Shown piece by piece: positions 31,201 to 63,553 of a stretch of DNA of 64,000 nt (positions are counted from its first letter, which is position 1; each line of letters begins with the position of its first letter). The DNA is taken from positions 45,446,001 to 45,510,000 of the forward strand of contig CM075979.1 in assembly GCA_038087875.1 (NCBI GenBank). Direction: 5' to 3'. The stretch is from Malacoraja senta. Lineage: Eukaryota. The notes under the pieces were generated by a model that was given only the letters and a program-made list of their open reading frames with translations, did not search any database and had not been told where the DNA came from. The translations under genes and the position numbers were made by a program.

Positions 31201-34200
31201 CGGTGAGAACGTCCAAACTCGATACAGACAGCGTCCATAGTCAGAATCGATCCCGGGTCTCTGGCGCTGTAAGGCAACAACTCATCCACTGCTCCATCGT
31301 GCCATTCCTAATTTGCTTTTGGTAAAATTGTAAATAGTCATTAATGTGTAGGATAGTGTTAGTGTACGGGGTGATCACTGGTCAGCGCGGACTCGGTGGG
31401 CTGAAGGGCTGTGTCTCTAAAGTCTAAAGACAAATGAGGTTCATAATGAAGAAGAGTTGAAGGTATTTTCTGCAGGAGTGAGATACAGATCCTTCGGCAG
31501 ATGAAGACTTCACTGTGGGGAAGAATAATAAAGCTCCTCGAGGTGTGATCCAGCTTCTCACATACCTTGTCTCAGGCTGTGTTGCCATTATCACATCAGA
31601 GAGACTTTCTTTTGTTTAAATGCAGTGCCCAAGTCAGATGCTGCCACGGGGAGTTGTGATGAAGGTGAACAACAGATAGAGAGGCAGGATACCCAAAATG
31701 CAGGAGCAAGTGAAGGTAAGGCTTTTCTCAAAGCATCCAGAGTATTGTTGTCCTTTCAGTGGCATTTGATGTCCAGCCATTGTCTGCAGACTGTACATGA
31801 TTTATATTTAGTTACTCTCTGCAAATATTATATACAATATTCAGGTCAATGCTCAAATATGTGGAATTTTCTGTTTGGGACTACATGCATTCAAGTTCAG
31901 TTGTTGTCACCTTGCTGTGTTTTAATACAGCGCCTGATTCAGATGTCGCAACAAGAAGTATTGATGAAGGTAAAATGGAAAAAGAGAATCTGGAAAATCA
32001 AAGTGCAGGAAAACAGGAAGGTAATGCTTTTGCTGAAATATAGAACATAGAACAGTGCAGCACAGGAACTTCAGCCCACAATATCTGTGCTGGACATGAT
32101 GCCAAGACCATTACTTATCTACCTGCACATAACCCATATCCCTCTATTCCCAGCTTATCCGTGCATATCCAAAAGCCTCATGAATGCCATTATCGTATCT
32201 GCCTCCACCACCACCCCTGGCAGCGCGTTCCAGTCACCCACCACCCTCTGAGTATAAAACCTGCCCCACACATAGTCATAGTCACAGAGTCATAGTGTGG
32301 AACACTAGAGGGTGTGAGCTACAGGGAGAGGTTGAGTACTCTGGGACTCCATTCCTTGGTGTGCAGGAGAATGATGCGTGTTCTTGCAGAGGTGTATAGG
32401 ATCATGAGAGGAATATATCGGGTAGATGCACAGAGTCTCTTGCCCAGAATAGGTGAATCGAGAACCAGAGGACATAGGTTTAAGGTGAAAGGGAAAAGAT
32501 CTGAGGGATACATTTTTTACACAGAGGGTGGTGGGTGTATGGAACTAGCTTCCAGAGAAGGTAGTTAAGACAGGGACTATCAAAAAATTTAAGAAACTGT
32601 TTGACAGGTACATGGACAGGTTTGGAGGGATATTGTAACAATATCCATGTAATTTATGCGTAAGAGCTGTACTTATTCTTGCACATGCTCAGTAAATCAG
32701 TCAGTGACCTTTGACTTGGAAATAAATCATTTCTGTTTTTGATCCCAACACGAGTGTGTGTGCAGCCATCTTTCTCTGTATATTATGTGCTAGTTTAATT
32801 ATTTTGTAAGCAGACATATGTATGAAAATTATGCAGTGATAACAGAACTGGATAAGAAAGAGAAACCGTATCAAAAAGCAGTATTCCTGCATTCCTTTGG
32901 ACCGGAAGGACTGCAAATCTTCAATACCCTGACATTCGAAACGGTAGCAGATGAGACGGATGTGAAAGTCATCTTCGACAAGATGTCCATCATCATCATA
33001 GGAGAGATGAATGAAACGTATGAAAGATTCATTTTCAATAAACGAGACCAGAAACCAGGGGAAAGCATTGAATCGTATGTTGTAGAGCTGAAGGAGTTTG
33101 CTAAAACATGCAACTTCTGTGAGTGCCTGAGAGAAAGCCTCATTCGAGATCACATCGTCATTGGTATTGAGGACCAGTCAACTAGGAAGACACTCCTTCA
33201 GAAGAGGAATCTGACACTGCAAGGGATTGTGGACATATGTAGATCCTTGGAGGTAACAGCGGCAAGAATGCAGGTCATCGGCGAAGAGCCGACAATACAC
33301 AAGTTGGAACGATTCAAGGCAGTGTAAACTACTTGGCAAGATTCCTGCCAATGTTGTTGGACACATTCGAGCCATTGAGGAGATTGACCCACAAGGAAGC
33401 AGAGTGGGAATGGTCATCAGAACATGACATGGCAATGTCAAAGATCAAGGTGCTGTTGACAACGGCACCTATCCTGGCGTACTACACACCAGACGAACAG
33501 CTGACCATACAATGTGATGCAAGCAAGGCAGGTCTAGGTGCAACACTTATGCAGAAAGGACACTCCACTTACTTTGGTAAATATATATGCCCCTAACTTT
33601 GATAACCCCCACTTTTTCAATAAAATCTTCAATATAATTGCAGAGTCAAACTATCAAAATGTTATAATAGGCGGAGACTTTAACTGTGTTTTAGATCCGT
33701 ACTTAGATAAATCAAGTCAAAAACAGAGAGGGAATATGAAATCGAAAACTGGGGAACTCCTCAATACCTACATAAATAACACTAATATAGCAGATGTTTG
33801 GAGAATTGTGAATCCAACTGGCAGGGAATATTCGTTTTACTCAATGGTACATAAGACATACTCACGTATAGACTACTTTCTGCTGGATACAAAATTAATT
33901 CCCCAAACATCTAATGCAATATATCATACAAATTCAATTTCAGACCATTCTCCACTAACTTTCTTTTTAAAACTGGAAGGATTGTCTAAGAATAATTCAT
34001 TCTGGAGATTTAACTCTCAAATTCTAAAAGATCCACAAGCGAGTATATATTTAAAAGAACAAATGGAGGTCTTTTTTCAAACAAATGATACTTCAGATAT
34101 ATCGCCTACTTTACTTTGGGAATCTTTTAAAGCATACATTAGGGGTATTATAATTTCATATCAAGCTTTTCAAAATAAAAAGAATAAGAATGAACAAAGA

Positions 34201-37200: not shown

Positions 37201-40200
37201 TTTTAATTTCGCTCTTATAGGGTCTTCGTCCTTTTTTGTTGTTACATTTTCTACACTTTTCTACACTTGCACTTTTTCCTTCACTTTCTTCTCTCTTTCA
37301 ATCTTTTCTTTCTCTAGTGTAAAAAAATAAATAAAGGGAGTACATTAATTGTAAGATGATATAAATGATGAGTATTAATGTATGTGGTTGTAATGTAATG
37401 TACTTCTAATAAATAAAAATTAAAAAAAAAAAAAAAAAAAAAAGAAAGGACAACCACTGTCCTATGTGAGTCGAGCATTGACACCAACCGAGCAGCGATA
37501 TGCTCGGATTGAGAAGGAGGCACTAGCAATAGTGTTTGCCCTCGAGCGCTTTCATCAGTACACCTACGGACAGTGAGTGATCGTGGAGAGTGACCACAAG
37601 TCGTTGGATGTCATCGTTAAAAAGCCTCTGCATAGAGCACCAAGACGTCTCCAGGGCATGATGATGACGATGCTACACTATGACATCGAGATCAAATGGG
37701 TAAAGGGAGCATACCTCCCTGACACCACAGGATCAACCAGATTCACTGATGGCAACGTAGTTGAGTCCTTGAGCATGGGAGAGGACAAGGTCAAACGTAT
37801 CCAAGCCCACACCAGGGAAGACGAAACGCTACAAACAGTTAAGATAGTAATCCAAAATGGATGGCCAGATCACAAGGCAGACGTCCCAGAGGCAGCACAA
37901 CCGTACTTCAATGTCAGAGACGGGTTGAGTGTGCAAGACGGCCTATTATTCAGAGGAGAGAGAGTTGTAATCCTTGTCACTCTACGTAGAGATATGAAGG
38001 AGACACACACTCTTTCGTTTCCTGCATAAAACTTTATAAATTTTGGAGTGATATTTTTGAAATATTTACAAAATTATTCAAGATAAAAATGGAACCTAAT
38101 ACTGAAATGATTATATTTGGAGTAATGGAAGATGGGAATAAATTGAACTCATCTCAAATTTATTTTAAAATTATGGTTTAATAATAGCAAAAAAACTACT
38201 TAAATTCTGGAAAATACCAATACCTATGCTTAAAATGTGGATTTCAAGCATGTTGGACACCGCACATCTTGAGGAAATGCGATTCCTCCTAATAGATAAA
38301 CCAGACCAATTCTTAACGAGTTGGTCTCCATTTGTCGTCTTTTTGGAATCATATGGTGCAACACAATTGTAGAAGCTAACTGTTCCAGGACGGTGAGGGA
38401 TGGTCAAGATTATAAATAATGATCTCCTTACTTTTCTTTTTTTATTTGCTACTCTCTTATTTCTATTTTCTTTTCTTCAATTTGCTTCTTTCACTATTTT
38501 TTTTCTTTTTCACACACTATATACCTCACGTTTTTCTATCTTTTATTATCTACTTTCTTTTACTTATTCTTCTTTATCATAATAAAACAAATAAGAAGCT
38601 GTACATAAAATGTTCGACAGGTACATGGACAGGTTTGGAGGGATATTGTGACAATATCCATGTAATTTTTGCGTATGAGCTGTACTCATTCTCGCACATG
38701 CTCAGTAAGTCAGTCAGAGTGACCTTTGACTTGGAAATAAATCATTCCTGTTTTTGATCCAGGGAAACCACCAGACGCGGGGAAGACTGTGAAACATTTG
38801 CAACCTCAGCTGACACAAAAAATACCAACACAACATGCATCACCAGAAAAAGATGCAACTCGTGAAACTCATAACAAAGAGAAATCGAAACAAAAACAAA
38901 GTGACACTAGAGAAGAAACTAGAAGTGATGCACAGAATGTACAGACTGAAAACAAGACACTTTTGAAAGAAACACCATCACAAAGACATGGGCAGGAAGA
39001 GCTGTCAGACCACCGGAGAGGTACGGCGAGTATGTCACGAAGTAATGTGTTTTGTTGCGATGTACCTACATGCTTATGAGTAGAAAGCATGTGAACATTA
39101 TTTTATGTTATTGAAATGTCACAAGTGTGACTATGATTGAAATTGTGAAATAAGATGGAACAGTTGTTTTATTTTGTTAAGTTAAACCATATTACTATGG
39201 TGTAATATTATGAAAAGTGTTTAAGTTTACTTTGTTTTGGATCGTTGGAAATGTAATCCCAAAATGTCAAAAAGGAAAGGATGTGACAATATCCATGTAA
39301 TTTATGCGTATGAGCTGTACTCATTCTCGCACATGCTCAGTAAATCAGTCAGTGACCTTTGACTTGGAAATAAATCATTCCTGTTTTTGATCACAACACG
39401 AGTGTGTGTGCAGCCATCTTTCTCTGTATATTATGTGCTAGTTTACTTATTTTGTAAGCAGACATATATCAAAACAGATATGGACCAAATCTGGGCAACT
39501 GGGACTAGCGTAGCTGGGACATGTTGGTCGACATGGGCAAGTTGGGCCGAAGGGTCTGTTTATACGCTGTATCACTCTATGACTCTATGACTCTAAGTGC
39601 ACTTGCCGAATTGTTTCAAATTATATTCCCTAGGTTGACAGAGAGACATTTTGTCCAGTGTGAATATCCCAGAAATGTTCATTCTGAAGTCTATTAAACA
39701 TTTGGCTTATAGCAGGGATGGGATCAGAGGAATTTTAATGTATAGAGAGATGTATTTAACTAAATAACAGTTGTACGTAACTTTTGCAGCAGCAACATGC
39801 AGATCTTTAGTCAGGTTAAGGCTTCTCTTTTGTGCTCTTAAATTATCGGTGGGAAACTACAAAAGTTCGAGACCTGTGATCCAGCTTCTCGGAATGTGTT
39901 GGGATACCTTATCTCAGGCAATGTTGGCATCATTACATGTGAGACTCCTTCTTGTGTTTTAATACAGCGCCGGATTCAGATGTCACCACAGGAAGTCCCG
40001 ATGAGGATGAAAATCAAGCAAGGAAACTGGAAAATCCAAGTGCAGTAAAACAGGAAGGTAATGTTTTTGCTGAAACATAGAACATAGGACAGTACAGCAC
40101 AGGAACAGGCCCTTCAACCCACAATGTCTGTGCTGAACATGATGCCAAGACCATCACTTATCTACCTGCACATAACCCATATCCCTATATTCCCAGCATA

Positions 40201-46200: not shown

Positions 46201-49200
46201 GACATTAGCTTGGAGGATGTGGAATCGATATGGGTAGAGCTGCGAGACACTAAGGGGCAGAAAACGCTAGTGGGAGTTGTGTACAGGCCACCTAACAGTA
46301 GTAGTGGAGTTGTGGATGGCATCAAACAGGAAATTAGAAATGCGTGCAACAAAGGTAAAACGGTTATAATGGGTGACTTCAATCTACATATAGATTGGGT
46401 GAATCAAATTGGCAGGGGAGCTGAGGAAGAGAATTTCTTGAAATGTATGCGGGATAGTTTTCTAAATCAACATGTAGAGGAACCAACGAGAGAGCAGGCT
46501 ATTCTAGACTGGGTATTGAGTAATAAGGAAGGGTTAGTTAGCAGGCTTGTTGTGCGTGGCCCCTTGGGCAAGAGTGGCCATAATATGGTTGAGTTCTTCA
46601 TTAGGATGGAGAGTGACATAGTTAATTCAGAAACAAGGGTTCTGAACATAAAGAAAGGTAACTTTGAGGGTATGAGACGTGAATTGGCCAAGATAGACTG
46701 GCAATTGATTCTTAAAAGGTTGATGGTGGATATGCAATGGAAGGCATTTAAAGGCTGCATGGATGAACTACAACAATTATTCATCCCAGTTTGGCAAAAG
46801 AATAAATCAGGGAAGGTAGTACATCCATGGATAACAAGGGAAATCAGGGATAGTATCAAAACAAAAGATGAAGCATACAAATTAGCCAGAAAAAGCAGGC
46901 TACCAGAGGACTGGGAGAAATTCAGAGTCCAGCAGAGGAGGATAAAGAGTTTAATTAGGAACAGGAAAATAGATTATGAAAGAAAACTGGCAGGGAACAT
47001 AAAAACTGACTGCAAAAGTTTTTATAGATATGTCAAGAGAAAAAGATTAGTTAAAACAAATGTAGGTCCCTTGCAGTTAGAAACAGATGAACTGATCATG
47101 GGGAACAAGGACATGGCAGACCAATTGAATAACTACTTTGGTTCTGTCTTCACTAAGGAATACTTAATTAATCTGCCGGAAATAGCAGGGGACCGGGGGT
47201 CAAATGAGATGGAGGAACTGAGGGAAATCCAGGTTAGCCGGGAAGTGGTGTTAAGTAAATTGAATGGATTAAAGGCCGATAAATCCCCAGGGCCAGATAG
47301 GCTGCATCCCAGAGTAATTAAGGAAGTAGCCCCAGAAATAGTGGATGCATTAGTGATAATTTTTCAAAACTCTTTAGATTCTGGAGTATTTCCTGATGAT
47401 TGGAGGGGCGGGGGGGGGGGGGGGGGACGAGGGCAGGTATATCTCCACTTTTTTCCTCTTTTTTTTTCCCCTTTTCCTCTCTTATATCTTGATTCACTCT
47501 TTGACCACACTACTTTGGTAGTCTAGGGGTCCTATCTTTTCACCTTTCACTTTTTTCCTCTCTTGTTTTTTCTTTCCTCTTTTCCCTCATTTTCAGGTTA
47601 AAAACTAAAAAAAAACAAAAAACTGTGCCCTCTAGTATTTGTATCTCGTATCCTGAGAAAAAGGTTCTGACTGTCTACCCTATCTATGGCTCTTAGAATT
47701 TTATAAACTATCATGAAAATTCACAAAATGGCACATTATCTGTGTGCAACTCCACATATTCAAATTCAGTTGTTACTCTTTGTGTGCTCTGCTCTTTAAA
47801 ATCTTTTTTTCCACCTGCAAGTGTAGATCTTTTAAATCTTATTTTCTTCCTGTAAGTATAGAACTATATTCTGCACTTCATCTTCCCCTTTGACTTGATT
47901 GTATTTATGGCTGGTACACCTGATCTGGTGGGATTGCTGCAAAACGAAGCTTTTCACTGTACCTCGGTACATGTGACAATAATCAACCTGAAGCTAAACC
48001 ACATGATTTTACTAGAATAAAGATCTTCTGCCATGAGACACAAGTGCAGATGCTGAATTGTTTCAATCTATATTCCCTGGGTTGACAGAGAGGCATTTTG
48101 TCCAGTGTGAATATCCCAGAATTGTTCATTCTGAAGTCTAGTAAACATTTGGCTTGTAGCAGGGATGGGATAGTCATAGAGTCACAGAGTGATACAGTGT
48201 GGAAACAGGTACTTTGGCCCAACTTGCCCACACTGGTCAACATGTCCCAGCTACGCTAGTCCCAACTGCCTGCGCTTGGTCCCTATCCCTCCAAACTTGT
48301 CCTATCCATGTATCTGTCTAACAGTTTCTCAAACGATAGTAACAGCCTCAACTACCTCCTCTGGCAGCATGTTCCATACACCCACCACCCTTTGTATGAA
48401 AAAGTTATGCCACAGATTCCTATTAAATCTATTCCCCTTCACCTTAAACCTATGTACATAGAGTCCCAGCCTACTCAACCTCTGCTTATAGCTCTGACTC
48501 TCTACTACTGGCAACATCCTTGTAAATCTTCTATGTTCCCTTTCCAGCTTGACAACATCTTTTCTATAACACGGTGCCAAGAACTGAACACAATACTCTA
48601 AATGTGGCCTCACAAACGGCTTCTACAACCTCATCTTGTCTTCCCAACTTCTATACTCAATACTCCGGCTGATGAAGGCCAATGTGTCAAAAGTCGTGTA
48701 TGTTCTCATCCAAATCATTGATATAGATGACAAACAGTAACGGGCGCAGCACCGAACCCTGAGGCATACCACTAGTCACAGGTCTCCAGTCTGAGAAGCA
48801 ACCTTCCACCATCACCCTCTGCTTTCTTCCATGAAGCCAATTTGCTATCCATTCAGCTATCTCTCCTTGGATCCCATGCGATCTAACCTTCCAGAGCAGC
48901 CTACCATGCAAAACTATTTCGAATGCCTTTCTGAAATCCATGTAAGATCTGTGGAATTTTGATGTCTGGTGATGTATTTAACTAAATAACAATTGTACGT
49001 AACCTTTGCAGCAGCAACATGCAGATCTTTAGTCAGGTTAAGGTTTCTCTTTTGTGCTCCTAAAATGTTGGTGGGAATCTACAAAAGTTCGAGACCTGCG
49101 ATCCAGCTTCTCGGAATGTGTTGGGATACCTTATCTCAGGCAGTGTTGGCATTATTACATGTGAGACTCCTCTCGAAAGGTTACCTATCCATGTTCTCCA

Positions 49201-52200
49201 GAGATGCAAACCTGACCCACCGAGTTACTCCAGCACTTTGTGCCCATGTTTATGTAAACCAGCATCTACGGTTCATTGTGTTTTCCACCACCTGCTTCAT
49301 CCATCATTGAATGGCAGTGAATACTGATGGGCTGAATGGCCTAATTCTGCTCCAAGAACGTACGAACTTCAGGTCAATTCTGCATCCTATACTAATCCAA
49401 TTCTCTATTCCCCTTCATATACTTATACAAACTCGTTGCATTCTCCTTAATCTTCTCAGCCAAAGTGATCTCATGCCTTCTCTTCGTCGTTCCAATTTCC
49501 TTCTGAAGTAACTCCGACATCCCGATGCTCCTCCAGGGATTCACGTGATCCCAGCTCTTCTTCTTGGCCCATGCCTCTTTTTCTCCAGCCAGAACCACAA
49601 TATCTCTTGTATTCCAGGCTTCCCCAGTCCATGCCGACCAGTGATCCCCATACATAGCACCATCCCACACATCAGGGACAAAGCCAATTGACCAACAAAC
49701 CTGTATGTCTATGGAGTGCGGGAGCAAACCGGAGCAACCGGAGAAAACCCACGCAGTCACGGGGAGAACGTACAAACTCCATACAGACAGCGTCCATAGT
49801 CAGAATCGATCCCGGGTCACTGGGACTGTAAGGCAACAACTCATCCACTGCTCCAATGTGCCATTCCTAATTTGCTTTTGGTAAAATTGTAAATAGTCAT
49901 TAATGTGTAGGATAGTGTTAGTGTACAGTGTGATCACTGGTCGGCGCGGACTCGGTGGGCCGAAGGGCTGTGTCTCTAAAGTCAAAAGACAAATGAGGTT
50001 CATAATGAAGAAGTGTTGAAGGTATTTTATGCAGGAGTGAGATACAGATCCTTCGGCAGATGAAGCCTTCACTGTGGGGAATAATAATAAAGTTCCTTGA
50101 GGTGTGATCCATCTTCTCACATACCTTGTCTCTGGTTATGTTGCCATTATCACATTTGAGAGACTTTATTTTATTTAAATGCAGTGCCCAAGTCAGATGC
50201 TGCCATGGGGAGTTGTGTTGAAGGTGAACAACAGACAGAGAGGCAGGATACCCAAAATGCAGGAGCAAGTGAAGGTAAGGCATTTCTCAAAGCATCCAGA
50301 GTATCGTTGCCCTTTCAGTGACATTTGATGTCCAACCATTGTCTCCAGACTGTACATGATTCATATTTAGTTAATTCCTGCTAATATTATATACAATATT
50401 CAGGTCAATGCTCAAATATGTGGAATTTTATGTTTGGGACTATATGCATTCAAGTTCAGTTGTTGTCACCGTGCTGTGTTTTAATACAGCGCCGGATTCA
50501 GATGTCGCTACAAGAATTCTTGATGAAGGTAAAATGGAAAAAGAGAATCTGGGAAATCAAAGTGCAGGAAAACAGGAAGGTAATGCTTTTGCTGAAATAT
50601 TGAATATAAAATAGTACAGCACAGGAACAGGCCCTTCTGCCCACAATATCTGTGCTAAACATGATGCCAAGACCTTCAATTCACTGCCTGCACATAACCC
50701 ATATCCCTCCATTCCCAGCATAACCTGCCCAGCACATAGTCATAGTCACAGAGTATTAGATAGAGTGTGGAAACAGGTCCTTCGGCTCAACTTGCCCACA
50801 CGGCCAACATGTCCCAGCTACACTAGTCGCACCTGCCAGCGCTTGGTCCATATCCCCCCAAACCTGTCCTATCCATGTACCTGTCTTACTGTTTCTCAAA
50901 TGATGGGACAGTCAAAACCTCAACTACCTCCTCTGATGGCTTGTTCCACACACCCACCACCCTTTGTGTGAAAAAGTTTCCCCTCCGATTCCTCTTAAAT
51001 CTTTTCCCCTTCACCTTGAACCTATGTCCTCTGGTCCTCGATTCCCCTACTCTGGGCAAGAGACTGTGTGCATCTACCTATTCCTCTCATGAGGCTGGGA
51101 ATAGAGTCCCAGCCTACTCAACCTCTCCCTATAGCTCACACCCTCTAGTCCCAGCAACATGCTCATAAAGCTTTTCTGAACCCTTTCAAGCTTGACAATA
51201 TCTTTCCTATAACATGGTGCCCAGAACTGAACACGGGATTATTATGACGATTTAATTCAATTTATAAATCTTTCTATTCTTCAATTCTACAGCTGCGCAA
51301 ATACTTAGCAGAGAAAATAATTTTCAAATGTTTTAAATTTTCAAGCATGTTGCTGTGAACATGATTTAAAACGTGTGAGCAGGCAGATGGAAACATTATT
51401 TCTTGTTATACAGCCAAGTTCAGATATCAAGCATGCTCTTTCAATATTTGGAATGGTGTCCATCCTTGCCAAGAGAAGTAAAGAATTATTTTGTAGACAC
51501 AAGAGACTACAGATGTTCGAATGTTGAGCAAAAAGTAAAGTGCTGGAGCAACTCAGCGGGTCAGGCAACATCTGTAGTGGGAATAGACCAATGACGTTTC
51601 AGATCAGGACCCATCTTCAGACTCAAGTCTGAAACGTCGTCTGTCCCTTCCCTCCATAGATCCTCCCTCTGAGCTCCTCCACCACTTTGCTTTCTGCTGA
51701 AGAATTATTTTTCATAATGGACTTAACATTACCAACAAACTGTAACTTCTGTCCAGGAATTGGAACAGGAAGGACCATTATGTTCAGCACAGACATTGTG
51801 GACTGAAGGACCTGTTTCCACCATGCATCATTTTATGACTCTATGACCCTACATAGATCAGTACAGTACAAGAACAGGCCCTTCAGTCCACAATGTCCGT
51901 GCTGAACATGATGCCAAGACCGGCTCTTATCTATAATCCATCTCCCTCCATTCCCTGCATATCCACGTGCCTGTCAAAAAGTCTCTTAAACACCACTATC
52001 ATATCCGCCTCCACCACCACCCCTGGCAGTGCGTTCCAGGCACTCAACACCCTCTGAGCAAAAAACGTTGCCATGCACATCTGCTTTAAACTTTACCCCT
52101 CTCACCCTAAACCGATGCCCTCTAATATTTGACATTTTCATCCTGGGGTAAAATGTTCTGACTGTCTACCCTGTCTATGCCTCTCATCATTTTATATACT

Positions 52201-55200
52201 TCCATCAGATCTCCCCTCAACCTCTGGCGTTCCAGAGAAAGATATATTGTCCAGAAAGCTGGAATTGATCTGTGTATTTTTATACTTTTTAAACTGGCAC
52301 CTGGTCAGCTTGTTTCCTGGCTAATTGTCTTGTTTATGTTGTTCAGGACAGGTAAATACAACGGACGATGAAGACCCAAACCGTACACCACTTATCGCCA
52401 AGACGGGCTCACAAACTGATTATGGTAATTACATATATCGAATACAAGATTCCCATTCTTCCCATGACACTTTGAACACACACAATTAGATGAAGTTTTA
52501 AACCAAGTTTAGAAACATTAGCACAAAACCACAGGTGCTGTCTGTATGGAGTTTGCACGTTCTCTCTGTGGCTGTGCGGGTTTTCTCCATGTTCATAGGT
52601 TATAGGTGCATAACTTGGCCATTCATAATCAAAGAGTCATACAGTGATACAACTTGGAAACAGGCCCTTCAGCCCACCTTACCCACACCGGCCAACATGT
52701 GCCAGCTACATTAGTCCCACCAACCTGCGTTTGACCCATATTCCTCCAAATCTGTCCAATCCATGTATCTGTCTAACTGTTTCTTAAACAATGGGATAGT
52801 CCCAGCATCATCCTCGTAAATCTTCTCTGTACCCTCGCCAGCTTGACGACATCTTTCCTATAATATGGTGCCCAGAACTGAACACAATACTCTAAATGCA
52901 GCCGCTCCAACGTCTTATACAACTGCAACATGACCTCCCAACTTCTATACTCAATTCTTTGACTGATGAAGGCCAGTCTGTCAAATGCCTTTTTGACCAA
53001 ACGTTCTACCTGCGACTCCACCTTCAAGGAACCAAGAGAAACAGTAACAGGCCCAGCACCGAACCCTGAGGCACACCAGTAGCCACAGGCCTCCAGTCTG
53101 AGGAACAACCTTCCACCATCAACTTCTGCTTCATTCCTTGAAGCCAATTTACAGCTATCTCTCCTTGGATCCCATACGATCTAACCTTCCAGAGCAGCCT
53201 ACCATGTGGTACCTTGTTCAATGCTTTGTTGAAGTTCATATATACAACAACTGCAACTCTGCCCTCATCGACCTTTTTGGTCACGTCTTCAAAAGACTCA
53301 ATCAGATTTGTGAGGCACGACCTCCCACGTACAAAACCAGAGTGATGTATTTAACTAAATAACAGTTGTATGTAACTTTTGCAGCAGCAACATGCAGATC
53401 TTTGGTCAGTTTAAGGCTTCTCTTTTGAGCTCTTAAAATGTTGGTGGGAAACTACAAAGATCGAGTCCTATGATCCAGCTTCTCGGAATGTGTTGGGATA
53501 CCTTATCTCATGCAGTGTTGGCATCATTACATGTGAGACTTCTACTTGTGTTTTAATACAGCTTCGGATTCAGATGTCATCACAGGAAGTCGCGATGAGG
53601 GTGAAAGGCAAGCAATGAATCTGGAAAATCAATGTGCAGGAAAATGGGAAGGTAATGCTTTTACTGAAACATCAAGTCAACTTTATTTGTTACATACACA
53701 TACAAGATGTCCAGTGAAATGAGAGTGGCAATGCTTGTGGGATTGTGCAAAACAACAGAAAAGAACAGAACAGATCCAGTATTTACATTTAAAAAAGTAG
53801 ATGCAACAGCATTTACGCCCTGGTGAGACCAGAGTTTACAGACCTAATGGCCTGTGGGAAGAAACTCTGTCTCATCCTCTCTGTTTTCGCAGTGTGACAG
53901 CGGAGGCGCTTGCCTGACCGCAGCTGGAACAGTCCGTTGCTGGGGTGGTAGGGGTCCTTCATGATCCTGCTAGCTCTGGATCTGCACCTCCTGGTGTATA
54001 GGTCCTGAAGGAGGGGGGGGGGTGTAGTTCCCGTGGTGCGTTCGGCAGAACACACTACTCTGTCTGCAGACTGTACATGATTCATATTTAGTTAATCCCT
54101 GCAAATATTATATACAATATTCAGGTCAATGCTCAAATATGTGGAATTTTATGTTTGGGACTACATGCATTCAAGTTCAGTTGTTGTCACCGTGCTGTGT
54201 TTTAATACAGCGCCGGATTCAGATGTCGCAACAAGAATTCTTGATGAAGGTAAAATGGAAAAAGAGAATCTGGGAAATCAAAGTGCAGGAAAACAGGAAG
54301 GTAATGCTTTTGCTGAAATATTGAACATAAAACAGTACAGCACAGGAACAGGCCCTTCTGCCCACAATATCTGTGCTAAACATGATGCCAAGACCATCAA
54401 TTCACTGCCTGCACATAACCCATATCCCTCCATTCCCAGCATATCCGTGTGTCTAGCCAAAAGCCTCTTAAACGCCACTATCGTATCAGCCTCGACCACT
54501 ACCTGGCAGCGTGTTCCAGTCACCCACCACCCACCACCCACTGTGTCTAAAACCTGCCCAGCACATAGTCATAGTCACAGAGTATTAGATACAGTGTGGA
54601 AACAGGTCCTTCGGCTCAACTTGCCCACACGGCCAACATGTCCCAGCTACACTAGTCGCACCTGCCAGCGCTTGGTCCATATCCCCCCAAACCTGACCTA
54701 TCCATGTACCTGTCTTACTGTTTCTCAAATGATGGGACAGTCAAAACCTCAACTACCTCCTCTGATGGCTTGTTCCACACACCCACCACCCTTTGTGTGA
54801 AAAAGTTTCCCCTCCGATTCCTCTTAAATCTTTTCCCCTTCACCTTGAACCTATGTCCTCTGGTCCTCGATTCCCCTACTCTGGGCAAGAGACTGTGTGC
54901 ATCTACCTATTCCTCTCATGAGGCTGGGAATAGAGTCCCAGCCTACTCAACCTCTCCCTATAGCTCACACCCTCTAGTCCCAGCAACATGCTCATAAAGC
55001 TTTTCTGAACCCTTTCAAGCTTGACAATATCTTTCCTATAACATGGTGCCCAGAACTGAACATGGGATTATTATGACGATTTAATTCAATTTATAAATCT
55101 TTCTATTCTTCAATTCTACAGCTGCGCAAATACTTAGCAGAGAAAATAATTTTCAAATGTTTTTAATTTTCAAGCATGTTGCTGTGAACATAATTTAAAA

Positions 55201-58200
55201 CGTGTGAGCAGGCAGATGGAAACATTATTTCTTGTTATACAGCCAAGTTCAGATATCAAGCATGCTCTTTCAATATTTGGAATGGTGTCCATCCTTGCCA
55301 AGAGAAGTAAAGAATTATTTTGTGGACACAAGAGACTACAGATGTTGGAATGTTGAGCAAGAAGTAAAGTGCTGGAGCAACTCAGCGGGCCAGGCAACAT
55401 CTGTAGTGGGAATAGACCAATGACGTTTCAGATCAGGACCCATCTTCAGACTCAAGTCTGAAACGTTGACTGTCCCTTCCCTCCATAGATCCTCCCTCTG
55501 AGCTCCTCCACCACTTTGCTTTCTGTTGAAGAATTATTTTTCATAATGGACTTAACATTACCAACAAACTGTAACTTCTGTCCAGGAATTGGAACAGGAA
55601 GGACCATTATGTTCAGCACAGACATTGTGGACTGAAGGACCTGTTTCCACAATGCATCATTTTATGACTCTATGACTCTACATAGATCAGTACAGTACAA
55701 GAACATGCCCTTCATTCCCCAATGTCCGTGCTAGACATGATGCCAAGACCGGCTCTTATCTATAATCCATCTCCCTCCATTCCCTGCATATCCACGTGCC
55801 TGTCACAAAGTCTCTTAAATGCCACTATCATATCCGCCTCCACCACCACCCCTGGCAGTGCGTCCCAGGCACTCAACACCCTCTGTGTAAAAAATGTTGC
55901 CATGCACATCTTCTTTAAACTTTACCCCTCTCACCCTAAACCGATGCCCTCTAATATTTGACATTTTCATCCTGGGGTAAAATGTTCTGACTGTCTACCC
56001 TGTCTATGCCTCTCATCATTTTATATACTTCCATCAGATCTCCCCTCAACCTCTGGCGTTCCAGAGAAAGATATATTGCCCAGAAAGCTGGAATGGATCT
56101 GTGTATTTTAATACTTTTTAAACTGGCACCTGGTCAGCTTGTTTCCTGGCTAATTGTCTTGTTTATGTTGTTCAGGACAGGTAAATACAACGGACGATGA
56201 AGACCCAAACCGTACACCACTTATCGCCAAGACGGGCTCACAAACTGATTATGGTAATTACATATATCGAATACAAGATTCCTATTCTTCCCACGACACT
56301 TTGAACACACACAATTAGATGAAGTTTTAAACCAAGTTTAGAAACATTAGCACAAAACCACAGGTGCTGTCTGTATGGAGTTTGCACGTTCTCTCTATGG
56401 CTGTGCGGGTTTTCTCCATGTTCATAGGTTATAGGTGCATAACTTGGCCATTTATAATCAAAGAGTCATACAGTGATACAACTTGGAAACAGGCCCTTCA
56501 GCCCACCTTACCCACACCGGTCAACATGTCCCAGCTACATTAGGCCCACCAACCTGCGTTTGACCCATATTCCTCCAAATCTGTCCAATCCATGTATCTG
56601 TCTAACTGTTTCTTAAACATTGGGATAGTCCCAGCATCATCCTCATACATCTTCTCTGTACCCTCGCCAGCTTGACGACATCTTTCCTATAATATGGTGC
56701 CCAGAACTGAACACAATACTCTAAATGCAGCCGCACCAACGTCTTATATAACTGCAACATGACCTCCCAACTTCTATACTCAATTCTTTGACTGATGAAG
56801 GCCAGTCTGTCAAATGCCTTTTTGACCAAACTTTCTACCTGCGACTCCACCTTCAAGGAACCAAGAGAAACAGTAACAGGCCCAGCACCGAACCCTGAGG
56901 CACACCAGTAGCCACAGGCCTCCAGTCTGAGGAACAACCTTCCACCATCAACTTCTGCTTCATTCCTTGAAGCCAATTTACAGCTATCTCTCCTTGGATC
57001 CCATACAATCTAACCTTCCAGAGCAGCCTACCATGTGGTACCTTGTTCAATGCTTTGTTGAAGTTCATATATACAACAACTGCAACTCTGCCCTCATTGA
57101 CCTTTTTGGTCACGTCTTCATAGATACATAGATACATAGAAAATAGGTGCAGGAGTAGGCCATTCGGCCCTTCGAGCCTGCACCGCCATTCAATATGATC
57201 ATGGCTGATCATCCAACTCAGTATCCCGTACCTGCCTTCTCTCCATACCCCCTGATCCCCTTAGCCACAAGGGCCACATCTAACTCCCTCTTAAATATAG
57301 CCAATGAACTGGCCTCAACTACCCTCTGTGGCAGAGAGTTCCAGAGATTCACCACTCTCTGTGTGAAAAAGTTTTCCTCATCTCGGTCTTAAAGGATTTC
57401 CCCCTTATCCTTAAGCTGTGACCCCTTCTCTGCACTCCCTCTATGGCTATAATGTCCTTCCTCAGATTTGGAGACCAAAACTGTACGCAATACTCCAGGT
57501 GTGGTCTCACCAAGACCCTGTACAACTGCAGTAGAACCTCCCTGCTCCTATACTCAAATCCTCTTGCTATGAAGGCCAACATACCATTCGCTTTCTTCAC
57601 TGCCTGCTGCACCTGCATGCCTACTTTCAATGACTGGTGTATCATGACACCCAGGTCTCGCTGCATCTCCCCATTTCCTAATCGGCCACCATTTAGATAA
57701 TAGTCTGCCTTCCCGTTTTTGCCACCAAAGTGGATAACCTCACATTTATCCACATTATACTGCATCTGCCAAACATTTGCCCACTCACCCAGCCTATCCA
57801 AGTCACCTTGCAGTCTCCTAGCATCCTCCTCACAGCTAACACTGCCCCCCAGCTTAGTGTCATCCGCAAACTTTGAGATGTTGCTTTCAATTCCCTCGTC
57901 CAGATCATTAATATAAATTGTAAATAGCTGGGGTCCCAGCACTGAGCCTTGCGGTACCCAATTAGTCACTGCCTGCCATTGTGAAAAGGACCCGTTTACT
58001 CCTACTCTTTACTTCCTGTTTGCCAGCCAGTTCTCTATCCACATCAATACTGAACCCCCGATACCGTGTGATTTAAGTTTGTATCCTAATCTCTTATGTG
58101 GTACCTTGTCGAAAGCCTTCTGAAAGTCCAGATACAACACATCCACTGATTCTCCCCTATCCACTCTACTAGTTACATCCTCGAAAAATTCTATAAGGTT

Positions 58201-58781
58201 CGTCAGACACGATTTACCTTTCGTAAATCCATGCTGACTTTGTCCAATGATTTCACCACTCTCCAAATGTGCTGCTATCCCATCTTTAATAACTGACTCT
58301 AGCAGTTTCCCCACTACCGATGTTAGACTAACTGGTCTGGAATTCCCCGTTCTCTCTCTCCCTCCCTTCTTAAAAAGTGGGGTTACGTTTGCTACCCTCC
58401 AATCCTCTTCAATACCCTTCAAAAGACTCAATCAGATTTGTGAGGCACGACCTCCCACGTACAAAACCAGAGTGATGTATTTAACTAAATAACAGTTGTA
58501 TGTAACTTTTGCAGCAGCAACATGCAGATCTTTGGTCAGTTTAAGGCTTCTCTTTTGAGCTCTTAAAATGTTGGTGGGAAACTACAAAGATCGAGTCCTA
58601 TGATCCAGCTTCTCGGAATGTGTTGGGATACCTTATCTCATGCAGTGTTGGCATCATTACATGTGAGACTTCTACTTGTGTTTTAATACAGCGTCGGATT
58701 CAGATGTCATCATAGGAAGTCCCGATGAGGGTGAAAGGCAAGCAATGAATCTGGAAAATCAATGTGCAGGAAAATGGGAAG
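13210..58781 (+). CDS. NCR3LG1: B7-H6 / NCR3LG1-like type I membrane IgSF gene (leader-V-C1-TM-long modular cytoplasmic tail); 3' end not certain in window
   Basis: Join of 13210-13258, 18737-19069, 22679-22993, 25296-25397, 25634-25711, 30093-30515, 31626-31715, 31931-32020, 39968-40057, 50185-50274, 50490-50579, 52347-52424, 53562-53651, 54211-54300, 56176-56253, 58692-58781. All junctions are AG/GT and phase 1, with no stops (~725 codons if all are used). The symbol denotes family resemblance only; orthology was not tested. Confidence 0.8.
13365..13652 (-). mobile_element. tRNA-derived V-SINE-type element (similar copies at ~23930-24225 +, ~31060-31300 -, ~49680-49870 -)
   Basis: Conserved core (c)gtacggagtttgtacattctccctgtgactgcgtgggttttctcc on the - strand, with an (aaact)n-type tail. 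Confidence 0.7.
14692..15157 (-). mobile_element. Penelope-like 3' fragment
   Basis: Shares aatgttcat...ctgcccaagcg.aa.atgagg...cctccaa...ggaggaggcccaggacag with 6230-6600. Confidence 0.75.
16365..18032 (+). mobile_element. 5'-truncated CR1 LINE interrupted by a MITE, with (ctatgttt)n tail
   Basis: Frameshifted RT ORFs 16379-17337. The 3' end resumes at 17846. Tail at 17985-18032. Confidence 0.9.
17290..17842. mobile_element. PIF/Harbinger-type MITE inserted in CR1
   Basis: TIRs AGGGCCTGTCCCACGGG / CCCGTGGGACAGGGCCT and TSD TTA/TTG at the host site gagTTAgatag. Confidence 0.88.
18160..18640. repeat. Compound minisatellite (units such as gtgttcccagtccgtggcatgtgtttcc)
   Basis: Directly visible. 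It explains the spurious Cys/Thr-rich ORFs in all six frames. Confidence 0.93.
18737..19069 (+). CDS. NCR3LG1: Exon 2, IgV domain, B7-H6-like
   Basis: ttttttag| acceptor and G|GTAAG donor. Reads NDNATLKC...VRW...[33 protein letters not shown] with canonical C-W-C and DxGxYxC, and several N-glycosylation sequons. Confidence 0.95.
19140..20525 (+). mobile_element. CR1 fragment (ORF1 end, endonuclease part of ORF2), 3'-truncated
   Basis: ORFs 19498-20351: [22 protein letters not shown]. Confidence 0.85.
20900..21690 (-). mobile_element. Rex/L2-type LINE 3' fragment (host of the RTE insertion)
   Basis: - strand ...[45 protein letters not shown], which is paralogous to the C-terminus of the element at 26101. 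Confidence 0.6.
20990..21248 (+). mobile_element. RTE-clade LINE 3' end
   Basis: Manual translation ...[29 protein letters not shown] (RTE C-terminal zinc finger), followed by a short UTR and (CAA)n tail. Confidence 0.85.
22679..22993 (+). CDS. NCR3LG1: Exon 3, IgC1 domain
   Basis: aatgcag| acceptor and G|GTGAGT donor. Reads [17 protein letters not shown]...[12 protein letters not shown]...YRCVVRH (C1-set signature). Confidence 0.95.
25296..25397 (+). CDS. Exon 4, transmembrane [34 protein letters not shown]
   Basis: ttttaacag| acceptor and G|GTAAAC donor, phase 1-1. Hydrophobic helix with GxxxG followed by a basic stop-transfer KKKCK. Confidence 0.9.
25634..25711 (+). CDS. Cytoplasmic 78-nt exon T1, [26 protein letters not shown]
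   Basis: ttgttcag| acceptor and G|GTAATT donor. Open, phase 1-1, with conserved copies at 52347 and 56176. Confidence 0.8.
26013..26079 (+). pseudogene. Truncated pseudo-exon of the 90-nt family (acceptor deleted)
   Basis: Matches the 3' two-thirds of the exons at 53562 and 58692 including the donor, but is fused upstream to SINE sequence at AGTCCC. Confidence 0.85.
26101..28785 (-). mobile_element. Rex-Babar/L2-type LINE, 5'-truncated, decayed
   Basis: ORF 26497-27231 has [31 protein letters not shown] and [15 protein letters not shown]; endonuclease remnants run to ~28790. 8-bp TSD TGAAACAT at 26093-26100 and 28786-28793. Confidence 0.88.
30093..30515 (+). CDS. Cytoplasmic exon encoding a divergent Ig-like domain lacking the canonical cysteines (141 aa)
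   Basis: tctttcag| acceptor and G|GTAATA donor. 423 nt open, phase 1-1, unique sequence. [18 protein letters not shown] resembles [19 protein letters not shown] of the C1 exon. The Ig-fold call is by eye. Confidence 0.75.
31626..31715 (+). CDS. 90-nt cytoplasmic exon A1, [30 protein letters not shown]
   Basis: aaatgcag| acceptor and G|GTAAG donor; open, phase 1-1. Confidence 0.8.
31931..32020 (+). CDS. 90-nt cytoplasmic exon B1, [30 protein letters not shown]
   Basis: tttaatacag| acceptor and G|GTAATG donor; open, phase 1-1. Confidence 0.8.
33563..37442 (+). mobile_element. L1 (LINE-1) element, 5'-truncated, ORF2 with a single stop, inserted in the Gypsy RNase H
   Basis: ORFs 33538-34968 and 34984-37023 are in the same frame (EN: GGDFN, SDH; RT: [22 protein letters not shown]; C-terminal Cys motif). 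Poly(A) tail and 10-bp TSD AGAAAGGACA (33553-33562, 37443-37452). Confidence 0.95.
38004..38610 (+). mobile_element. Second L1 3' fragment (ORF2 end and pyrimidine-rich UTR)
   Basis: Sequence paralogous to the L1 ORF2 end at 36680-37020 ([12 protein letters not shown]...IIFG, then KFWK..IP..MWIS.M..T.HLEE). Confidence 0.75.
38611..38760 (+). repeat. Internal duplicate of the Gypsy 5' host flank plus partial LTR
   Basis: tgttcgacaggtacatggacaggtttggagggatat|TGTGACAATATCC... repeats 32598-32745. Confidence 0.9.
39968..40057 (+). CDS. 90-nt cytoplasmic exon B'', [30 protein letters not shown]
   Basis: tttaatacag| acceptor and G|GTAATG donor; open, phase 1-1. Confidence 0.8.
40729..41676 (+). 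CDS. CR1 ORF1 (zinc finger plus SGNH esterase), intact 315 aa
   Basis: CSAC...CRKC, GDSIVR, HIGTND and DGLHL motifs. Confidence 0.93.
   Translation: MSVEIGPVVCSACNIWEIRDMVGVPGDYVCRKCVQLQLLADRIERLELRLDSYWSIHDAEKVVNSTYSELVTPQVKGKRTEREQVANSQHSSRQVVQESPAVISLLNRYTILDTVGGDGSSGEGSSSQVHGTMGGSAAKEGRKKSGRAIVIGDSIVRGIDRRFCGHKRDSRMVCCLPGARVTDVTERLQNILEGEGEQPVVVVHIGTNDIGKKRVEVLQGEFRELGDKLKSRTSKVIISGLLPVPRASQSRNRRILQMNTWLEKWCKGEGFKFLGHWNQFWGRWDQYKQDGLHLGWNGTNVLGGVFASAVGEDLN
41676..44660 (+). pseudogene. CR1 ORF2 (APE endonuclease plus RT), one in-frame TAG at 43095-43097
   Basis: ORFs 41676-43097 and 43098-44660 are contiguous in frame. The paralogue near 47210 reads GSNEMEEL where this copy reads GLN*MEEL. 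Confidence 0.93.
45032..47622 (+). mobile_element. Composite retro-insertion: L1 ORF2 piece / CR1 ORF1 end / CR1 ORF2 5' half / L1-like 3' UTR with A-tail
   Basis: 10-bp TSD CTGTGCCCTC at 45022-45031 and 47623-47632 flanks all four segments. Confidence 0.8.
50185..50274 (+). CDS. 90-nt cytoplasmic exon A2, [30 protein letters not shown]
   Basis: aaatgcag| acceptor and G|GTAAG donor; open. Confidence 0.75.
50490..50579 (+). CDS. 90-nt cytoplasmic exon B2, [30 protein letters not shown]
   Basis: ttaatacag| acceptor and G|GTAATG donor; open. Confidence 0.75.
51293..51336 (+). CDS. Candidate terminal coding exon [14 protein letters not shown] (duplicate at 55122-55198 reads 11 codons further)
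   Basis: Good acceptor tctttctattcttcaattctacag| in a non-repetitive island, and phase-1 reading reaches a stop. There is no independent support. Confidence 0.3.
52347..52424 (+). CDS. 78-nt cytoplasmic exon T2, [26 protein letters not shown]
   Basis: gttcag| acceptor and G|GTAATT donor; open; paralogue of 25634. Confidence 0.7.
53562..53651 (+). CDS. 90-nt cytoplasmic exon B'2, [30 protein letters not shown]
   Basis: ttttaatacag| acceptor and G|GTAATG donor; open. Confidence 0.7.
53673..54060 (-). mobile_element. 3' end of the Rex/L2 LINE, cut by the tandem-duplication junction
   Basis: Same as 26101-26500 and 58803-59199. Confidence 0.88.
54211..54300 (+). CDS. 90-nt cytoplasmic exon B3, [30 protein letters not shown]
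   Basis: Splice sites intact; one synonymous difference from B2. Confidence 0.7.
56176..56253 (+). CDS. 78-nt cytoplasmic exon T3 (identical to T2)
   Basis: Splice sites intact; open. Confidence 0.7.
57121..58410 (-). mobile_element. Young 5'-truncated CR1 present only in duplication unit 2
   Basis: RT ORFs 57349-58431 and tail at 57121. The empty site gtcttca|aaagactc is seen at ~53290. One internal deletion at ~57424. Confidence 0.9.
58692..58781 (+). CDS. 90-nt cytoplasmic exon B'3, [30 protein letters not shown]
   Basis: Splice sites intact; open. Confidence 0.7.
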
Positions 58782-58802
58782 GTAATGCTTTTACTGAAAC
58801 AT

Positions 58803-62800: not shown

Positions 62801-63553
62801 AGGGCACCGGGGAGATGGCAGCCCTGCCGGCAGTCTGTTCGTTTTTTCTTTCTTTTTGTTATTTTTCGTATGTTAAAAGTTTTGTTTTAATGTTCTTTGG
62901 TATGTTTTATGTTGGGGGGAAGGGGGGGGATCGGGAGAAACATTTGATTTCAAGTTCTTACCTTCCCGGAGATGTGATCAATTTTCGGATCACATTCTCC
63001 GGGCTCTGCGGCCTTCCATCGATGGAGCTGGAGGCCTCCTCGGACTGTCGTGAGCCCCACAGCGGGGCGCGGACTTAACATCGGAGCGGATCCCTTGCCT
63101 GGGATCGCTCCCACCACGACCACCGTGGACTTACCATCAAGGGCTCGCAGTCTCGGGAAAGGCTAAGTCAGGAGCTCCAACGTCGCGGAAGGCTCGACCA
63201 GCCCCGACGCGAGGTTCGATCGCCCGGCGCGGAGGAGCTGACGCTCCCCCCGATGCAGGAGCTGATCGCCTCGACGCAGGGGGCCCGAACGCCGCCGGCT
63301 ACGAGAATCAAGATCATCCCATCAACGGAGGGCTTGAGGCCCACGAACGAGGAAGAACAAAAGGAAGAACTTGAACTTTATTTCGTCTTCCATCACAGTG
63401 AGGAATGTGTAGGAGTCACTGTGGTGGATGTTCATGTTAAAATGTGTTTTTGAGTGATCTGTTGCTTTTTATTGTATGACTGACCTGGCCAATGAAATTC
63501 TTTGTATGTTGCAAAACATACTTGGCGAATAAAGTATGATTCTGATTCTGATT
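62801..63553 (+). mobile_element. GC-rich non-coding retroposon (SINE-like) with (tctgat)n tail, inserted in a - strand CR1 fragment
   Basis: Interrupts CR1 sequence (cactgaagtcca| ... |atatgaaacatccactgc). aataaa precedes the short-repeat tail. Confidence 0.55.

What the first reader, a model, noticed from the sequence alone, without database searches (positions are those of the whole stretch)
31626..58781. Eight intact paralogous 90-nt acidic exons in four subtypes
Seen: consensus xPDSDVxTGSxDEGExxxxxLENQxAGKxE. All eight are exactly 90 nt, stop-free and with intact splice sites, while the surrounding repeats carry indels and frameshifts. B1 vs B2 differ at 5 nt (3 nonsynonymous), and B2 vs B3 at 1 synonymous site. 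B-type copies share the same downstream SINE, so they duplicated after it inserted. Inference: a disordered, Ser/acidic (CK2-like) spacer under selection for frame and length more than for sequence.
Basis: partly seen in the sequence, partly recalled or inferred. Interest (0 to 1): 0.78.

Follow-up and report, generated by a model that had tools for sequence, protein, structure and literature searches.

The report
Repeated acidic tail exons, skate B7-H6-like gene
The eight 90-base segments are real, splice-ready repeat exons that build a floppy, acidic stretch in the inner tail of a skate immune-ligand (B7-H6-like) gene; they multiply and turn over quickly, keeping only their reading frame and a few residues, which is a fairly ordinary way for such tails to evolve.

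Summary
There are eight 90-nt, stop-free, AG..GT-bounded, phase 1-1 units at the stated coordinates.

The units lie downstream of V-set, C1-set, transmembrane, 78-nt linker and Ig-like exons of a B7-H6-like gene, so they encode cytoplasmic tail. The array grew by nested segmental duplications.

The same unit occurs only in two public skate gene models, from Leucoraja erinacea and Rhinoraja longicauda. In L. erinacea, eight predicted isoforms differ by whole 30-aa units. A 26-aa relative is detectable in Mobula.

- **Sequence:** exon substitutions run at the intron rate (29/630 vs 365/7682), and omega is about 0.8.
- **Frame and length:** among 29 full-length units in three loci there are no stops (6.8 expected), no indels (about 11 expected) and no lost splice dinucleotides (7 expected).
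- **Structure:** models show no fold (pLDDT 21-29), and each unit carries a net charge of -3 to -5.

I obtained no RNA evidence for this window, because all four runs laid were genomic DNA. The CK2 idea rests only on a minimal motif. The scan noted this stretch before (s1-140099). This is a new member of a known kind.

The parts
18712..19101 (+). V-set Ig exon of the host gene (approximate, tblastn-aligned part)
   Evidence: Pfam V-set E 2e-8 on ORF 18715-19158. tblastn to P0002 residues 10-141 at 41% identity.
22675..22953 (+). C1-set Ig exon (approximate)
   Evidence: Pfam C1-set E 1e-13 on ORF 22591-23187. tblastn to P0002 residues 130-223.
25253..25402 (+). Transmembrane exon (approximate). 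A hydrophobic span is followed by KKKCKGK, and the exon ends in phase 1.
   Evidence: tblastn to P0002 residues 218-269 at 58% identity. Donor read. AF2 places a helix at the equivalent residues 235-267 of P0002.
25634..25711 (+). L0: 78-nt juxtamembrane linker exon, phase 1-1
   Evidence: tblastn. AG/GT and length.
26012..26076 (+). D0: ninth, dead copy of the 90-nt unit. It is D-type, its 5' ~26 nt and acceptor are replaced by repeat sequence, and it has a 3-nt insertion.
   Evidence: nhmmer E 1e-17 covering profile positions 41-126 only. The alignment shows the same breakpoint in L. erinacea.
30092..30515 (+). Ig-like exon of the tail, phase 1-1. Its last 31 codons are the sequence that precedes the first acidic unit in the skate gene models.
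   Evidence: tblastn to P0002 residues 355-497 at 79% identity, E 1e-63. Splice sites read. The equivalent domain in the P0002 model has pLDDT 65-88.
31626..31715 (+). A1 unit ([30 protein letters not shown])
31931..32020 (+). B1 unit
39968..40057 (+). C1 unit. Its upstream flank is D-like and its downstream flank is B-like.
50185..50274 (+). A2 unit. It differs from A1 at 3 nt, all nonsynonymous.
50490..50579 (+). B2 unit
52347..52424 (+). L1: intact copy of the 78-nt linker exon inside the array
53562..53651 (+). D1 unit
54211..54300 (+). B3 unit. It differs from B2 at 1 synonymous nt.
56176..56253 (+). L2: second intact copy of the 78-nt linker exon
58692..58781 (+). D2 unit
30629..32160 (+). 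Segment holding A1 and B1. It is duplicated at 49174-50725 (A2 and B2) at 90.5% identity.
   Evidence: self-BLAST
50340..59207 (+). Tandem duplicate of a B-L-D triplet (B2-L1-D1 and B3-L2-D2) at 97-98% identity. The second copy carries a 1.3-kb LINE-like insert.
   Evidence: self-BLAST rows 50722-53291 = 54551-57120 and 53287-54070 = 58417-59207. Family D2.
58718..64000 (+). Start of a second higher-order unit. It is a copy of 26013-29648 at 96-97% identity, which is the DNA leading up to the Ig-like exon.
   Evidence: self-BLAST. That a second Ig-like exon follows beyond the window is inference only.

Best explanation
The eight segments are symmetric (phase 1-1) cassette exons in the cytoplasmic tail of a skate B7-H6-like (V-C1-TM) gene. 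They lie after the transmembrane, 78-nt linker and Ig-like tail exons. Each adds 30 residues of a strongly acidic, unfolded peptide with net charge -3 to -5. The conserved core is [ST]4-D-x-x-T8-G9-S10-x-D-E-G-E, and the rest is free to vary. Because every tail exon is in phase 1, any number of units can be duplicated, deleted or skipped without breaking the frame. The array grew by nested tandem segmental duplications: an A-B doublet, a B-L-D triplet, and a ~32.7-kb higher-order unit. It turns over fast. Only A1, B1, C1 and the dead D0 are collinear with the Leucoraja erinacea locus, and the other five units are lineage-specific. Shown: exon anatomy, position in the gene, the duplications, presence of the same units in annotated proteins of two other skates, whole-unit differences between predicted isoforms, near-neutral sequence change with preserved frame, length and splice sites, and predicted disorder. 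Inferred: that all eight are spliced into mRNA in this animal. Also inferred: that the product acts as a length-tunable acidic linker or multivalent Ser/Thr-acidic docking stretch between and after the tail's Ig-like domains.
For: Anatomy. Host gene: V-set and C1-set exons. TM, linker, Ig-like and unit exons lie in the order of protein P0002. The ectodomain of P0002 is closest to human B7-H6 among solved structures, E 1e-23 against 1.9e-14 for CD276. A profile of the unit finds only two clusters among 1.84 billion proteins: XP_055505898.1 of L. erinacea with 11 units and XP_078271721.1 of R. longicauda with 7 units. All 7 units inside the R. longicauda gene model are in its protein. Isoforms X1-X8 of LOC129705962 differ by whole units. 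Duplications. Collinearity at ~92% with the L. erinacea locus. Exon rate equals intron rate, and omega is 0.82. There are no stops, indels or lost splice sites over ~157 substitutions on the tree of 29 units. The only small indel sits in the dead copy D0. Disorder. Conserved columns. A 26-aa relative in Mobula tails scores 19.2 in hhalign, and 0 of 150 column shuffles reach that.
Against: There are no RNA reads for this window. The four runs laid were genomic DNA, with contigs running through the introns. No transcript-derived protein fragments were found. No protein of the window's own gene turned up in the databases. In L. erinacea, the intact unit collinear with B1 is absent from all isoforms except X2, where only its last 15 residues are in the protein. 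So an intact unit need not be used. Five of the eight are young duplicates at 1-6% divergence, and their intactness alone is expected by chance. The terminal-branch tests are weak, with P = 0.08 for stops. The gene's 3' end was not found in the window.
Confidence: 0.72

Rival explanations
1. Only a few units are functional exons, for example A1 and C1. The rest are passengers of recent segmental duplication that look intact only because they are young, and they are mostly skipped or never recognised by the spliceosome.
For: A2, B2, B3, D1 and D2 differ from their nearest copy by 1-5 nt. That matches flank divergence: 12/360 in exons against 171/4816 in flanks. On terminal branches only 2.5 stops and 3.9 indels are expected. 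The L. erinacea unit collinear with B1 is intact but left out of seven of eight predicted isoforms. Six truncated dead copies exist across the three loci.
Against: None of the 29 full-length units in three loci carries a stop, an indel or a changed AG/GT. All 7 units within the R. longicauda model and 13 of 13 in L. erinacea appear in at least one predicted protein. The terminal-branch indel test is still P = 0.02.
Confidence: 0.2
2. The units are under diversifying selection, for example as a tail targeted by pathogens. On this view unit types are driven apart rather than drifting.
For: Between types, exons differ more than their shared flanks. C1 vs B3 is 20/90 against 36/343 (p = 0.007). 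C1 vs D1 is 14/90 against 15/199 (p = 0.055). D1 vs D2 is 3/90 against 0/270 upstream (p = 0.015). pN/pS is 1.1-3.4 among B, C and D types.
Against: Synonymous counts are tiny (1-4), so no pN/pS value is significant. Thirteen independent pairs give omega 0.82. Pooled exon and intron rates are equal. Mosaic flanks are equally explained by recombination or conversion with breakpoints near the exon: C1 has a D-like upstream flank and a B-like downstream flank.
Confidence: 0.06
3. The units are not exons of the gene at all. They are fragments of a dispersed repeat or transposable element that happen to be open.
For: They sit among SINE- and LINE-rich DNA, and a repeat abuts the donor of the B and C units.
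Against: nhmmer finds them nowhere else in the window. The peptide profile hits only the tails of these skate genes among 1.84 billion proteins. The units carry matched splice signals and one phase.
Confidence: 0.02

Closest known systems
Chicken BG genes (butyrophilin/B7 superfamily): cytoplasmic tails built from many tiny repeated exons
   Same: Both are B7-superfamily membrane proteins whose cytoplasmic tail is encoded by a long array of short, equal-length, in-frame exons. In BG genes these fall into sequence groups and number 13-36 per gene. There, as here, genes expand and contract dynamically (PMC4046983). Here the count is 8, 13 and 7-8 units in three skate loci.
   Different: BG exons are 21 or 24 nt and encode heptads thought to form a coiled coil. 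The skate units are 90 nt, acidic, and predicted to have no helix or any fold. No sequence similarity was seen. The ectodomain here is V-C1 and B7-H6-like, whereas BG has a single V domain.
Human B7-H6 (NCR3LG1), ligand of NKp30
   Same: The ectodomain of the skate homologue P0002 is closest to B7-H6 among all solved structures. The window gene has the same V-set, C1-set and TM exon order.
   Different: The profile of the unit found no mammalian protein. From my own knowledge, untested here, the human tail is short and has no such repeat exons and no Ig-like domains. Binding to NKp30 is untested for the skate gene.
Titin PEVK segment (from my own knowledge, not tested here)
   Same: It has about 28-residue units, each encoded by its own symmetric exon, multiplied by tandem duplication and alternatively spliced. 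They give an unfolded, charged segment whose length is tuned by exon number.
   Different: Its composition is Pro/Glu/Val/Lys-rich, it is a muscle spring rather than a receptor tail, and it shares no homology.
Acidic repeat units in tails of other elasmobranch B7-H6-like gene models
   Same: The place in the protein is the same, after the TM and between or after the tail Ig-like domains. These units are also acidic, Gln/Asn-rich and tandem, and the genes also have many predicted isoforms. The Mobula unit aligns with the skate unit in the register PDE-9 residues-NQ-6 residues.
   Different: The lengths differ: 26 aa in Mobula, 36 aa in Stegostoma and 43 aa in Hemiscyllium/Chiloscyllium. The shark units give no profile signal against the skate unit. 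So 'exactly 90 nt' holds only within skates.

Membership tests
Symmetric cassette-exon array | All units have the same length, divisible by 3, and the same intron phase on both sides | tested here: met
   The 8 of 8 window units and 29 of 29 full-length units in three loci are 90 nt and phase 1-1, with AG and GT.
Symmetric cassette-exon array | Transcripts differ by inclusion or skipping of whole units | tested here: inconclusive
   Predicted isoforms X1-X8 of L. erinacea LOC129705962 differ by whole 30-aa units. These are database predictions from another locus. No RNA reads could be laid on this window.
B7-H6 (NCR3LG1)-like gene | V-set plus C1-set ectodomain closest to B7-H6, followed by one TM | tested here: met
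   Pfam V-set and C1-set hits on window ORFs. The TM exon is seen. For homologue P0002 the best solved relatives are the three B7-H6 entries, E ~1e-23. The window's own V exon is only 41% identical to P0002.
B7-H6 (NCR3LG1)-like gene | Binds NKp30 | not testable with these tools
   This needs a binding assay.
Chicken BG-type tail | 21- or 24-nt exons encoding heptad repeats (coiled coil) | tested here: not met
   The units are 90 nt. AF2 gives no helix and pLDDT 21-29. The BG description comes from PMC4046983.
Chicken BG-type tail | Exon number varies between genes or haplotypes through expansion and contraction | tested here: met
   There are 8, 13 and 8 intact units plus 1, 4 and 1 truncated units in the three loci. 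Only A1, B1, C1 and D0 are collinear with L. erinacea.
Intrinsically disordered acidic linker | No predicted fold, high net charge and low hydropathy | tested here: met
   AF2 pLDDT is 21-29 with no secondary structure over residues 502-691 of P0002. The ESM model of P0008 has pLDDT 0.32. Every window unit falls below the charge-hydropathy boundary, with net charge -3 to -5. These are predictions only.
CK2-type phospho-acidic motif | [ST]-x-x-[DE] minimal consensus, conserved | tested here: inconclusive
   Ser10 fits the consensus in 6/8 window units and 20/29 overall, and is lost in B2 and B3. The invariant S/T4 does not fit, because its +3 residue is not acidic.
CK2-type phospho-acidic motif | Actually phosphorylated by CK2 | not testable with these tools
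   This needs a kinase assay or phosphoproteomics.

The most novel reading that the evidence does not exclude
The units are more than filler. On this reading they form a multivalent array of a conserved Ser/Thr-acidic motif ([ST]D..TGS.DEGE) that recruits a cytoplasmic partner to a B7-H6-like ligand, giving reverse signalling or trafficking control. Valency would be set by exon copy number and exon skipping. The rapid birth and death of units, and the excess exon divergence between types, would reflect conflict with pathogens that target the tail.
Probability: 0.12. Interest if true: 0.6.

Novelty: new member of a known kind. Interest (0 to 1): 0.34.

Why it matters
It is a clean, quantifiable case of exon-level birth and death. 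A 30-residue module has its frame, length and splice signals held while its sequence drifts at the intron rate. It sits in the tail of an ancient NK-ligand-type gene. It also shows that elasmobranch B7-H6-like genes carry long modular tails, made of Ig-like domains plus acidic repeats, that mammals lack. Those tails are unnamed in the databases I searched: Pfam has no family for them and the models are labelled 'uncharacterized protein'. For annotators, it explains why such loci get split or oddly named models such as 'ribosome-binding protein 1-like' and 'neurofilament medium polypeptide-like'. It does not open a long-standing question.

Tried and rejected
1. RNA evidence. Two run searches and the single read-laying run gave only genomic-DNA-like runs. 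Contigs crossed introns, repeat depth was huge, and the run marked 'RNA?' was re-labelled probably DNA. No junction information was obtained, and this says nothing for or against expression.

I did not try it another way. I used total tree length and independent sister pairs instead.

3. A search for short transcript-derived protein fragments with four units as query found nothing.

4. Neither Flajnik et al. 2012 nor Ohta & Flajnik 2015 on shark B7H6 is held. I therefore could not check whether the tail was described there.

5. Profile comparison with the shark 36-aa and 43-aa units gave no signal.

6. The ESM Atlas neighbours of the tail are unrelated low-complexity proteins scoring 0.80 or below, which is chance level.

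7. The transposable-element origin of the unit was rejected.

8. Purifying selection on the amino-acid sequence was rejected as a general statement. A few columns are nonetheless conserved.
Full report
**Observation**

Each copy is exactly 90 nt. Each is preceded by a pyrimidine-rich tract ending in CAG and followed by GTAAT or GTAAG.

The open frame is phase 1-1. The first codon takes its first base from the preceding exon. Every unit ends with a lone G, so consecutive units join as G+CG/CT (Ala) or G+TG (Val).

Pairwise differences confirm four types:
- A1/A2 differ at 3 nt.
- B1/B2/B3 differ at 1-5 nt.
- D1/D2 differ at 3 nt.
- C1 is 13-14 nt from D and 20 nt from B.
- A is 31-36 nt from everything else.

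It is D-type. Its first ~26 nt and its acceptor are replaced by repeat sequence, and it carries a 3-nt insertion.

**What the units belong to**

Upstream on the same strand, in order, lie these exons:
- a V-set exon and a C1-set exon (Pfam);
- a transmembrane exon followed by KKKCKGK;
- a 78-nt linker exon (25634-25711);
- a 424-nt Ig-like exon (30092-30515).

These exons match, in this order, the 691-aa Rhinoraja longicauda protein XP_078271721.1, here P0002. The TM, linker and Ig-like exons were checked and end in phase 1. The ectodomain of P0002 is closest to human B7-H6 among all solved structures, with E 1e-23 against 1.9e-14 for CD276.

The units therefore encode cytoplasmic tail of a B7-H6-like gene. 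I count the same 12: L0, the Ig-like exon, eight units, and two intact copies of the linker exon at 52347-52424 and 56176-56253.

**How the array arose**

Self-BLAST shows nested duplications:
- The A1-B1 segment (30629-32160) recurs at 49174-50725 at 90.5% identity.
- A B-L-D triplet is tandemly duplicated at 97-98% identity (B2-L1-D1, then B3-L2-D2).
- The DNA from D2 to the window's end copies 26013-29648 at 96-97% identity. That is the stretch from the dead D0 towards the Ig-like exon.

The last point suggests a ~32.7-kb higher-order unit, with a second Ig-like exon just beyond the window. This is inference only.

**Relatives**

A profile of the eight peptides was searched against 1.84 billion representative proteins. 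It finds only two real clusters:
- L. erinacea LOC129705962, with 11 matched units in isoform X7 and 13 in X1;
- R. longicauda LOC144602449, with 7 units.

Their loci hold 13 intact plus 4 truncated units (L002) and 8 intact plus 1 truncated unit (L001). All 7 units inside the R. longicauda gene model are in its protein.

The eight predicted isoforms of the L. erinacea gene differ by whole 30-aa units. They also differ by a 38-aa and a 45-aa cassette.

The window is collinear with the L. erinacea locus at ~92% identity through C1-set, TM, L0, D0, A1, B1 and C1. D0 has the same breakpoint in both. So the window is either the orthologue in another skate or a close paralogue, and I cannot tell which. 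The other five units have no collinear partner and cluster with their window neighbours in the tree. They are therefore lineage-specific duplicates.

Other elasmobranch homologues have tails of the same design but with other acidic units:
- 26 aa in Mobula;
- 36 aa in Stegostoma;
- 43 aa in Hemiscyllium and Chiloscyllium.

The Mobula unit aligns with the skate unit in hhalign with score 19.2. Column-shuffled controls average 8.2 +/- 2.1, and none of 150 reaches 19.2. The shark units give no signal.

**Selection tests**

*Exon against intron.*
- Recent within-window duplicates: 12/360 in exons vs 171/4816 in flanks.
- Collinear window vs L. erinacea: 17/270 vs 194/2866.
- Pooled: 4.6% vs 4.75%, odds ratio 0.97.

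*Coding pattern.* Thirteen phylogenetically independent pairs give 32.3 nonsynonymous and 13.7 synonymous changes. The neutral expectation is 2.9:1, so omega is ~0.82, with p = 0.5.

*Frame.* The ML tree of the 29 full-length units has length 1.74 substitutions per site, or about 157 substitutions.
- 4.3% of random mutations in these sequences make a stop. That gives 6.8 expected stops and none seen, P~0.001.
- Introns show 25 gap events per 365 substitutions. That gives 10.8 expected indels in the units and none seen, P~2e-5.
- About 7 changes are expected at the four splice dinucleotide positions and none is seen, P~0.001.
- The one small indel in the family sits in the dead copy D0.

*Caveat.* 64% of the tree length is on internal branches. 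On terminal branches alone the figures are P = 0.08 for stops and P = 0.02 for indels. So the family is clearly kept translatable and spliceable. The status of each young copy is not settled.

*Conserved columns.* A few columns are conserved across all 29 units: S/T4 in 29, T8 in 27, G9 in 26, S10 in 24, E13 in 26 and E30 in 27.

*Unexplained.* Between types, exons differ more than their shared flanks:
- C1/B3, p = 0.007;
- C1/D1, p = 0.055;
- D1/D2 against the upstream flank, p = 0.015.

This could be diversification, or flank homogenisation by recombination. The counts are too small to decide.

**Structure and chemistry**

An AlphaFold2 model of P0002, built with 19 homologues, gives these values:
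- pLDDT 65-88 for the tail Ig-like domain;
- a TM helix at 235-267;
- pLDDT 21-29 with no secondary structure across residues 502-691, which hold six of the seven units; the seventh (residues 325-354) lies in the other long low-confidence stretch, 267-352.

The ESM model of the L. erinacea tail has mean pLDDT 0.32. Each window unit has net charge -3 to -5 and lies below the charge-hydropathy boundary.

The minimal CK2 consensus fits only Ser10. It is present in 6 of 8 window units and absent from B2 and B3. This is a lead, not a finding.

**RNA**

I could not test inclusion in this genome. The runs found held the stretch as DNA. No transcript-derived fragments were in the protein collection. 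The only transcript-level support is indirect: database gene models from two other skate loci.

**Comparison and verdict**

The closest known system is the chicken BG tail. It is also a B7-superfamily protein, with 13-36 repeated 21- or 24-nt exons per gene and dynamic expansion and contraction (PMC4046983). The skate units work like that in genomic terms. They are not members of that family, because exon size and predicted structure differ.

The titin PEVK segment is a functional analogue, from my own knowledge. It is built from exon-sized disordered units whose number sets the length of the segment.

The units appear in public gene models but are unnamed there. They match no Pfam family: searches list none for the tail-only proteins.

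I rate this a new member of a known kind.

Noticed in passing
window 26012-26076: This is a dead ninth copy of the unit (D0). Its 5' truncation breakpoint is shared with the L. erinacea locus. The window copy has since gained a 3-nt insertion, the only small indel in the whole unit family.
   Followed up: yes
window 52347-52424 and 56176-56253: Two intact 78-nt phase 1-1 copies of the juxtamembrane linker exon (25634-25711) lie inside the acidic array. They would insert [26 protein letters not shown] between B and D units if spliced.
   Followed up: partly
window 58718-64000 vs 26013-29648: A higher-order duplication of ~32.7 kb at 96-97% identity. It implies that a second Ig-like tail exon lies about 450 nt beyond the window's end, so the gene probably does not end in the window.
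   Followed up: partly
window 3711-3836, 16639-16762, 43952-44077, 57614-57739(-); L002 isoform exon: The 38-aa cassette GYPLWRQKQVGRLISQW... in L. erinacea isoforms matches dispersed LINE-like copies in the window. It looks like an exonised transposon fragment.
   Followed up: no
window 18712-19101 vs 30092-30514: The V exon is only 41% identical to the R. longicauda protein and the C1 exon 33%. The tail Ig-like exon is 79% identical and the TM exon 58%. Either the tail is far better conserved than the ectodomain, or paralogues share tails.
   Followed up: no
L002 53801-53876, 60053-60128, 62361-62436: Three 5'-truncated B-type pseudo-exons lie about 450 nt after C-type units in L. erinacea. 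They were duplicated together with those units.
   Followed up: no
L002 1-6943 and 10001-79876: In L. erinacea the ectodomain part (a 293-aa V-C1 model) and the tail (LOC129705962, which starts at a Met inside the Ig-like exon remnant) are annotated as two genes. Where the window has 2 kb holding the Ig-like exon, that locus has only 0.9 kb.
   Followed up: partly
window 53292-53561 vs 58422-58691: The 270 nt upstream of D1 and D2 are identical, while the 90-nt exons differ at 3 sites (Fisher p = 0.015). This remains unexplained.
   Followed up: partly
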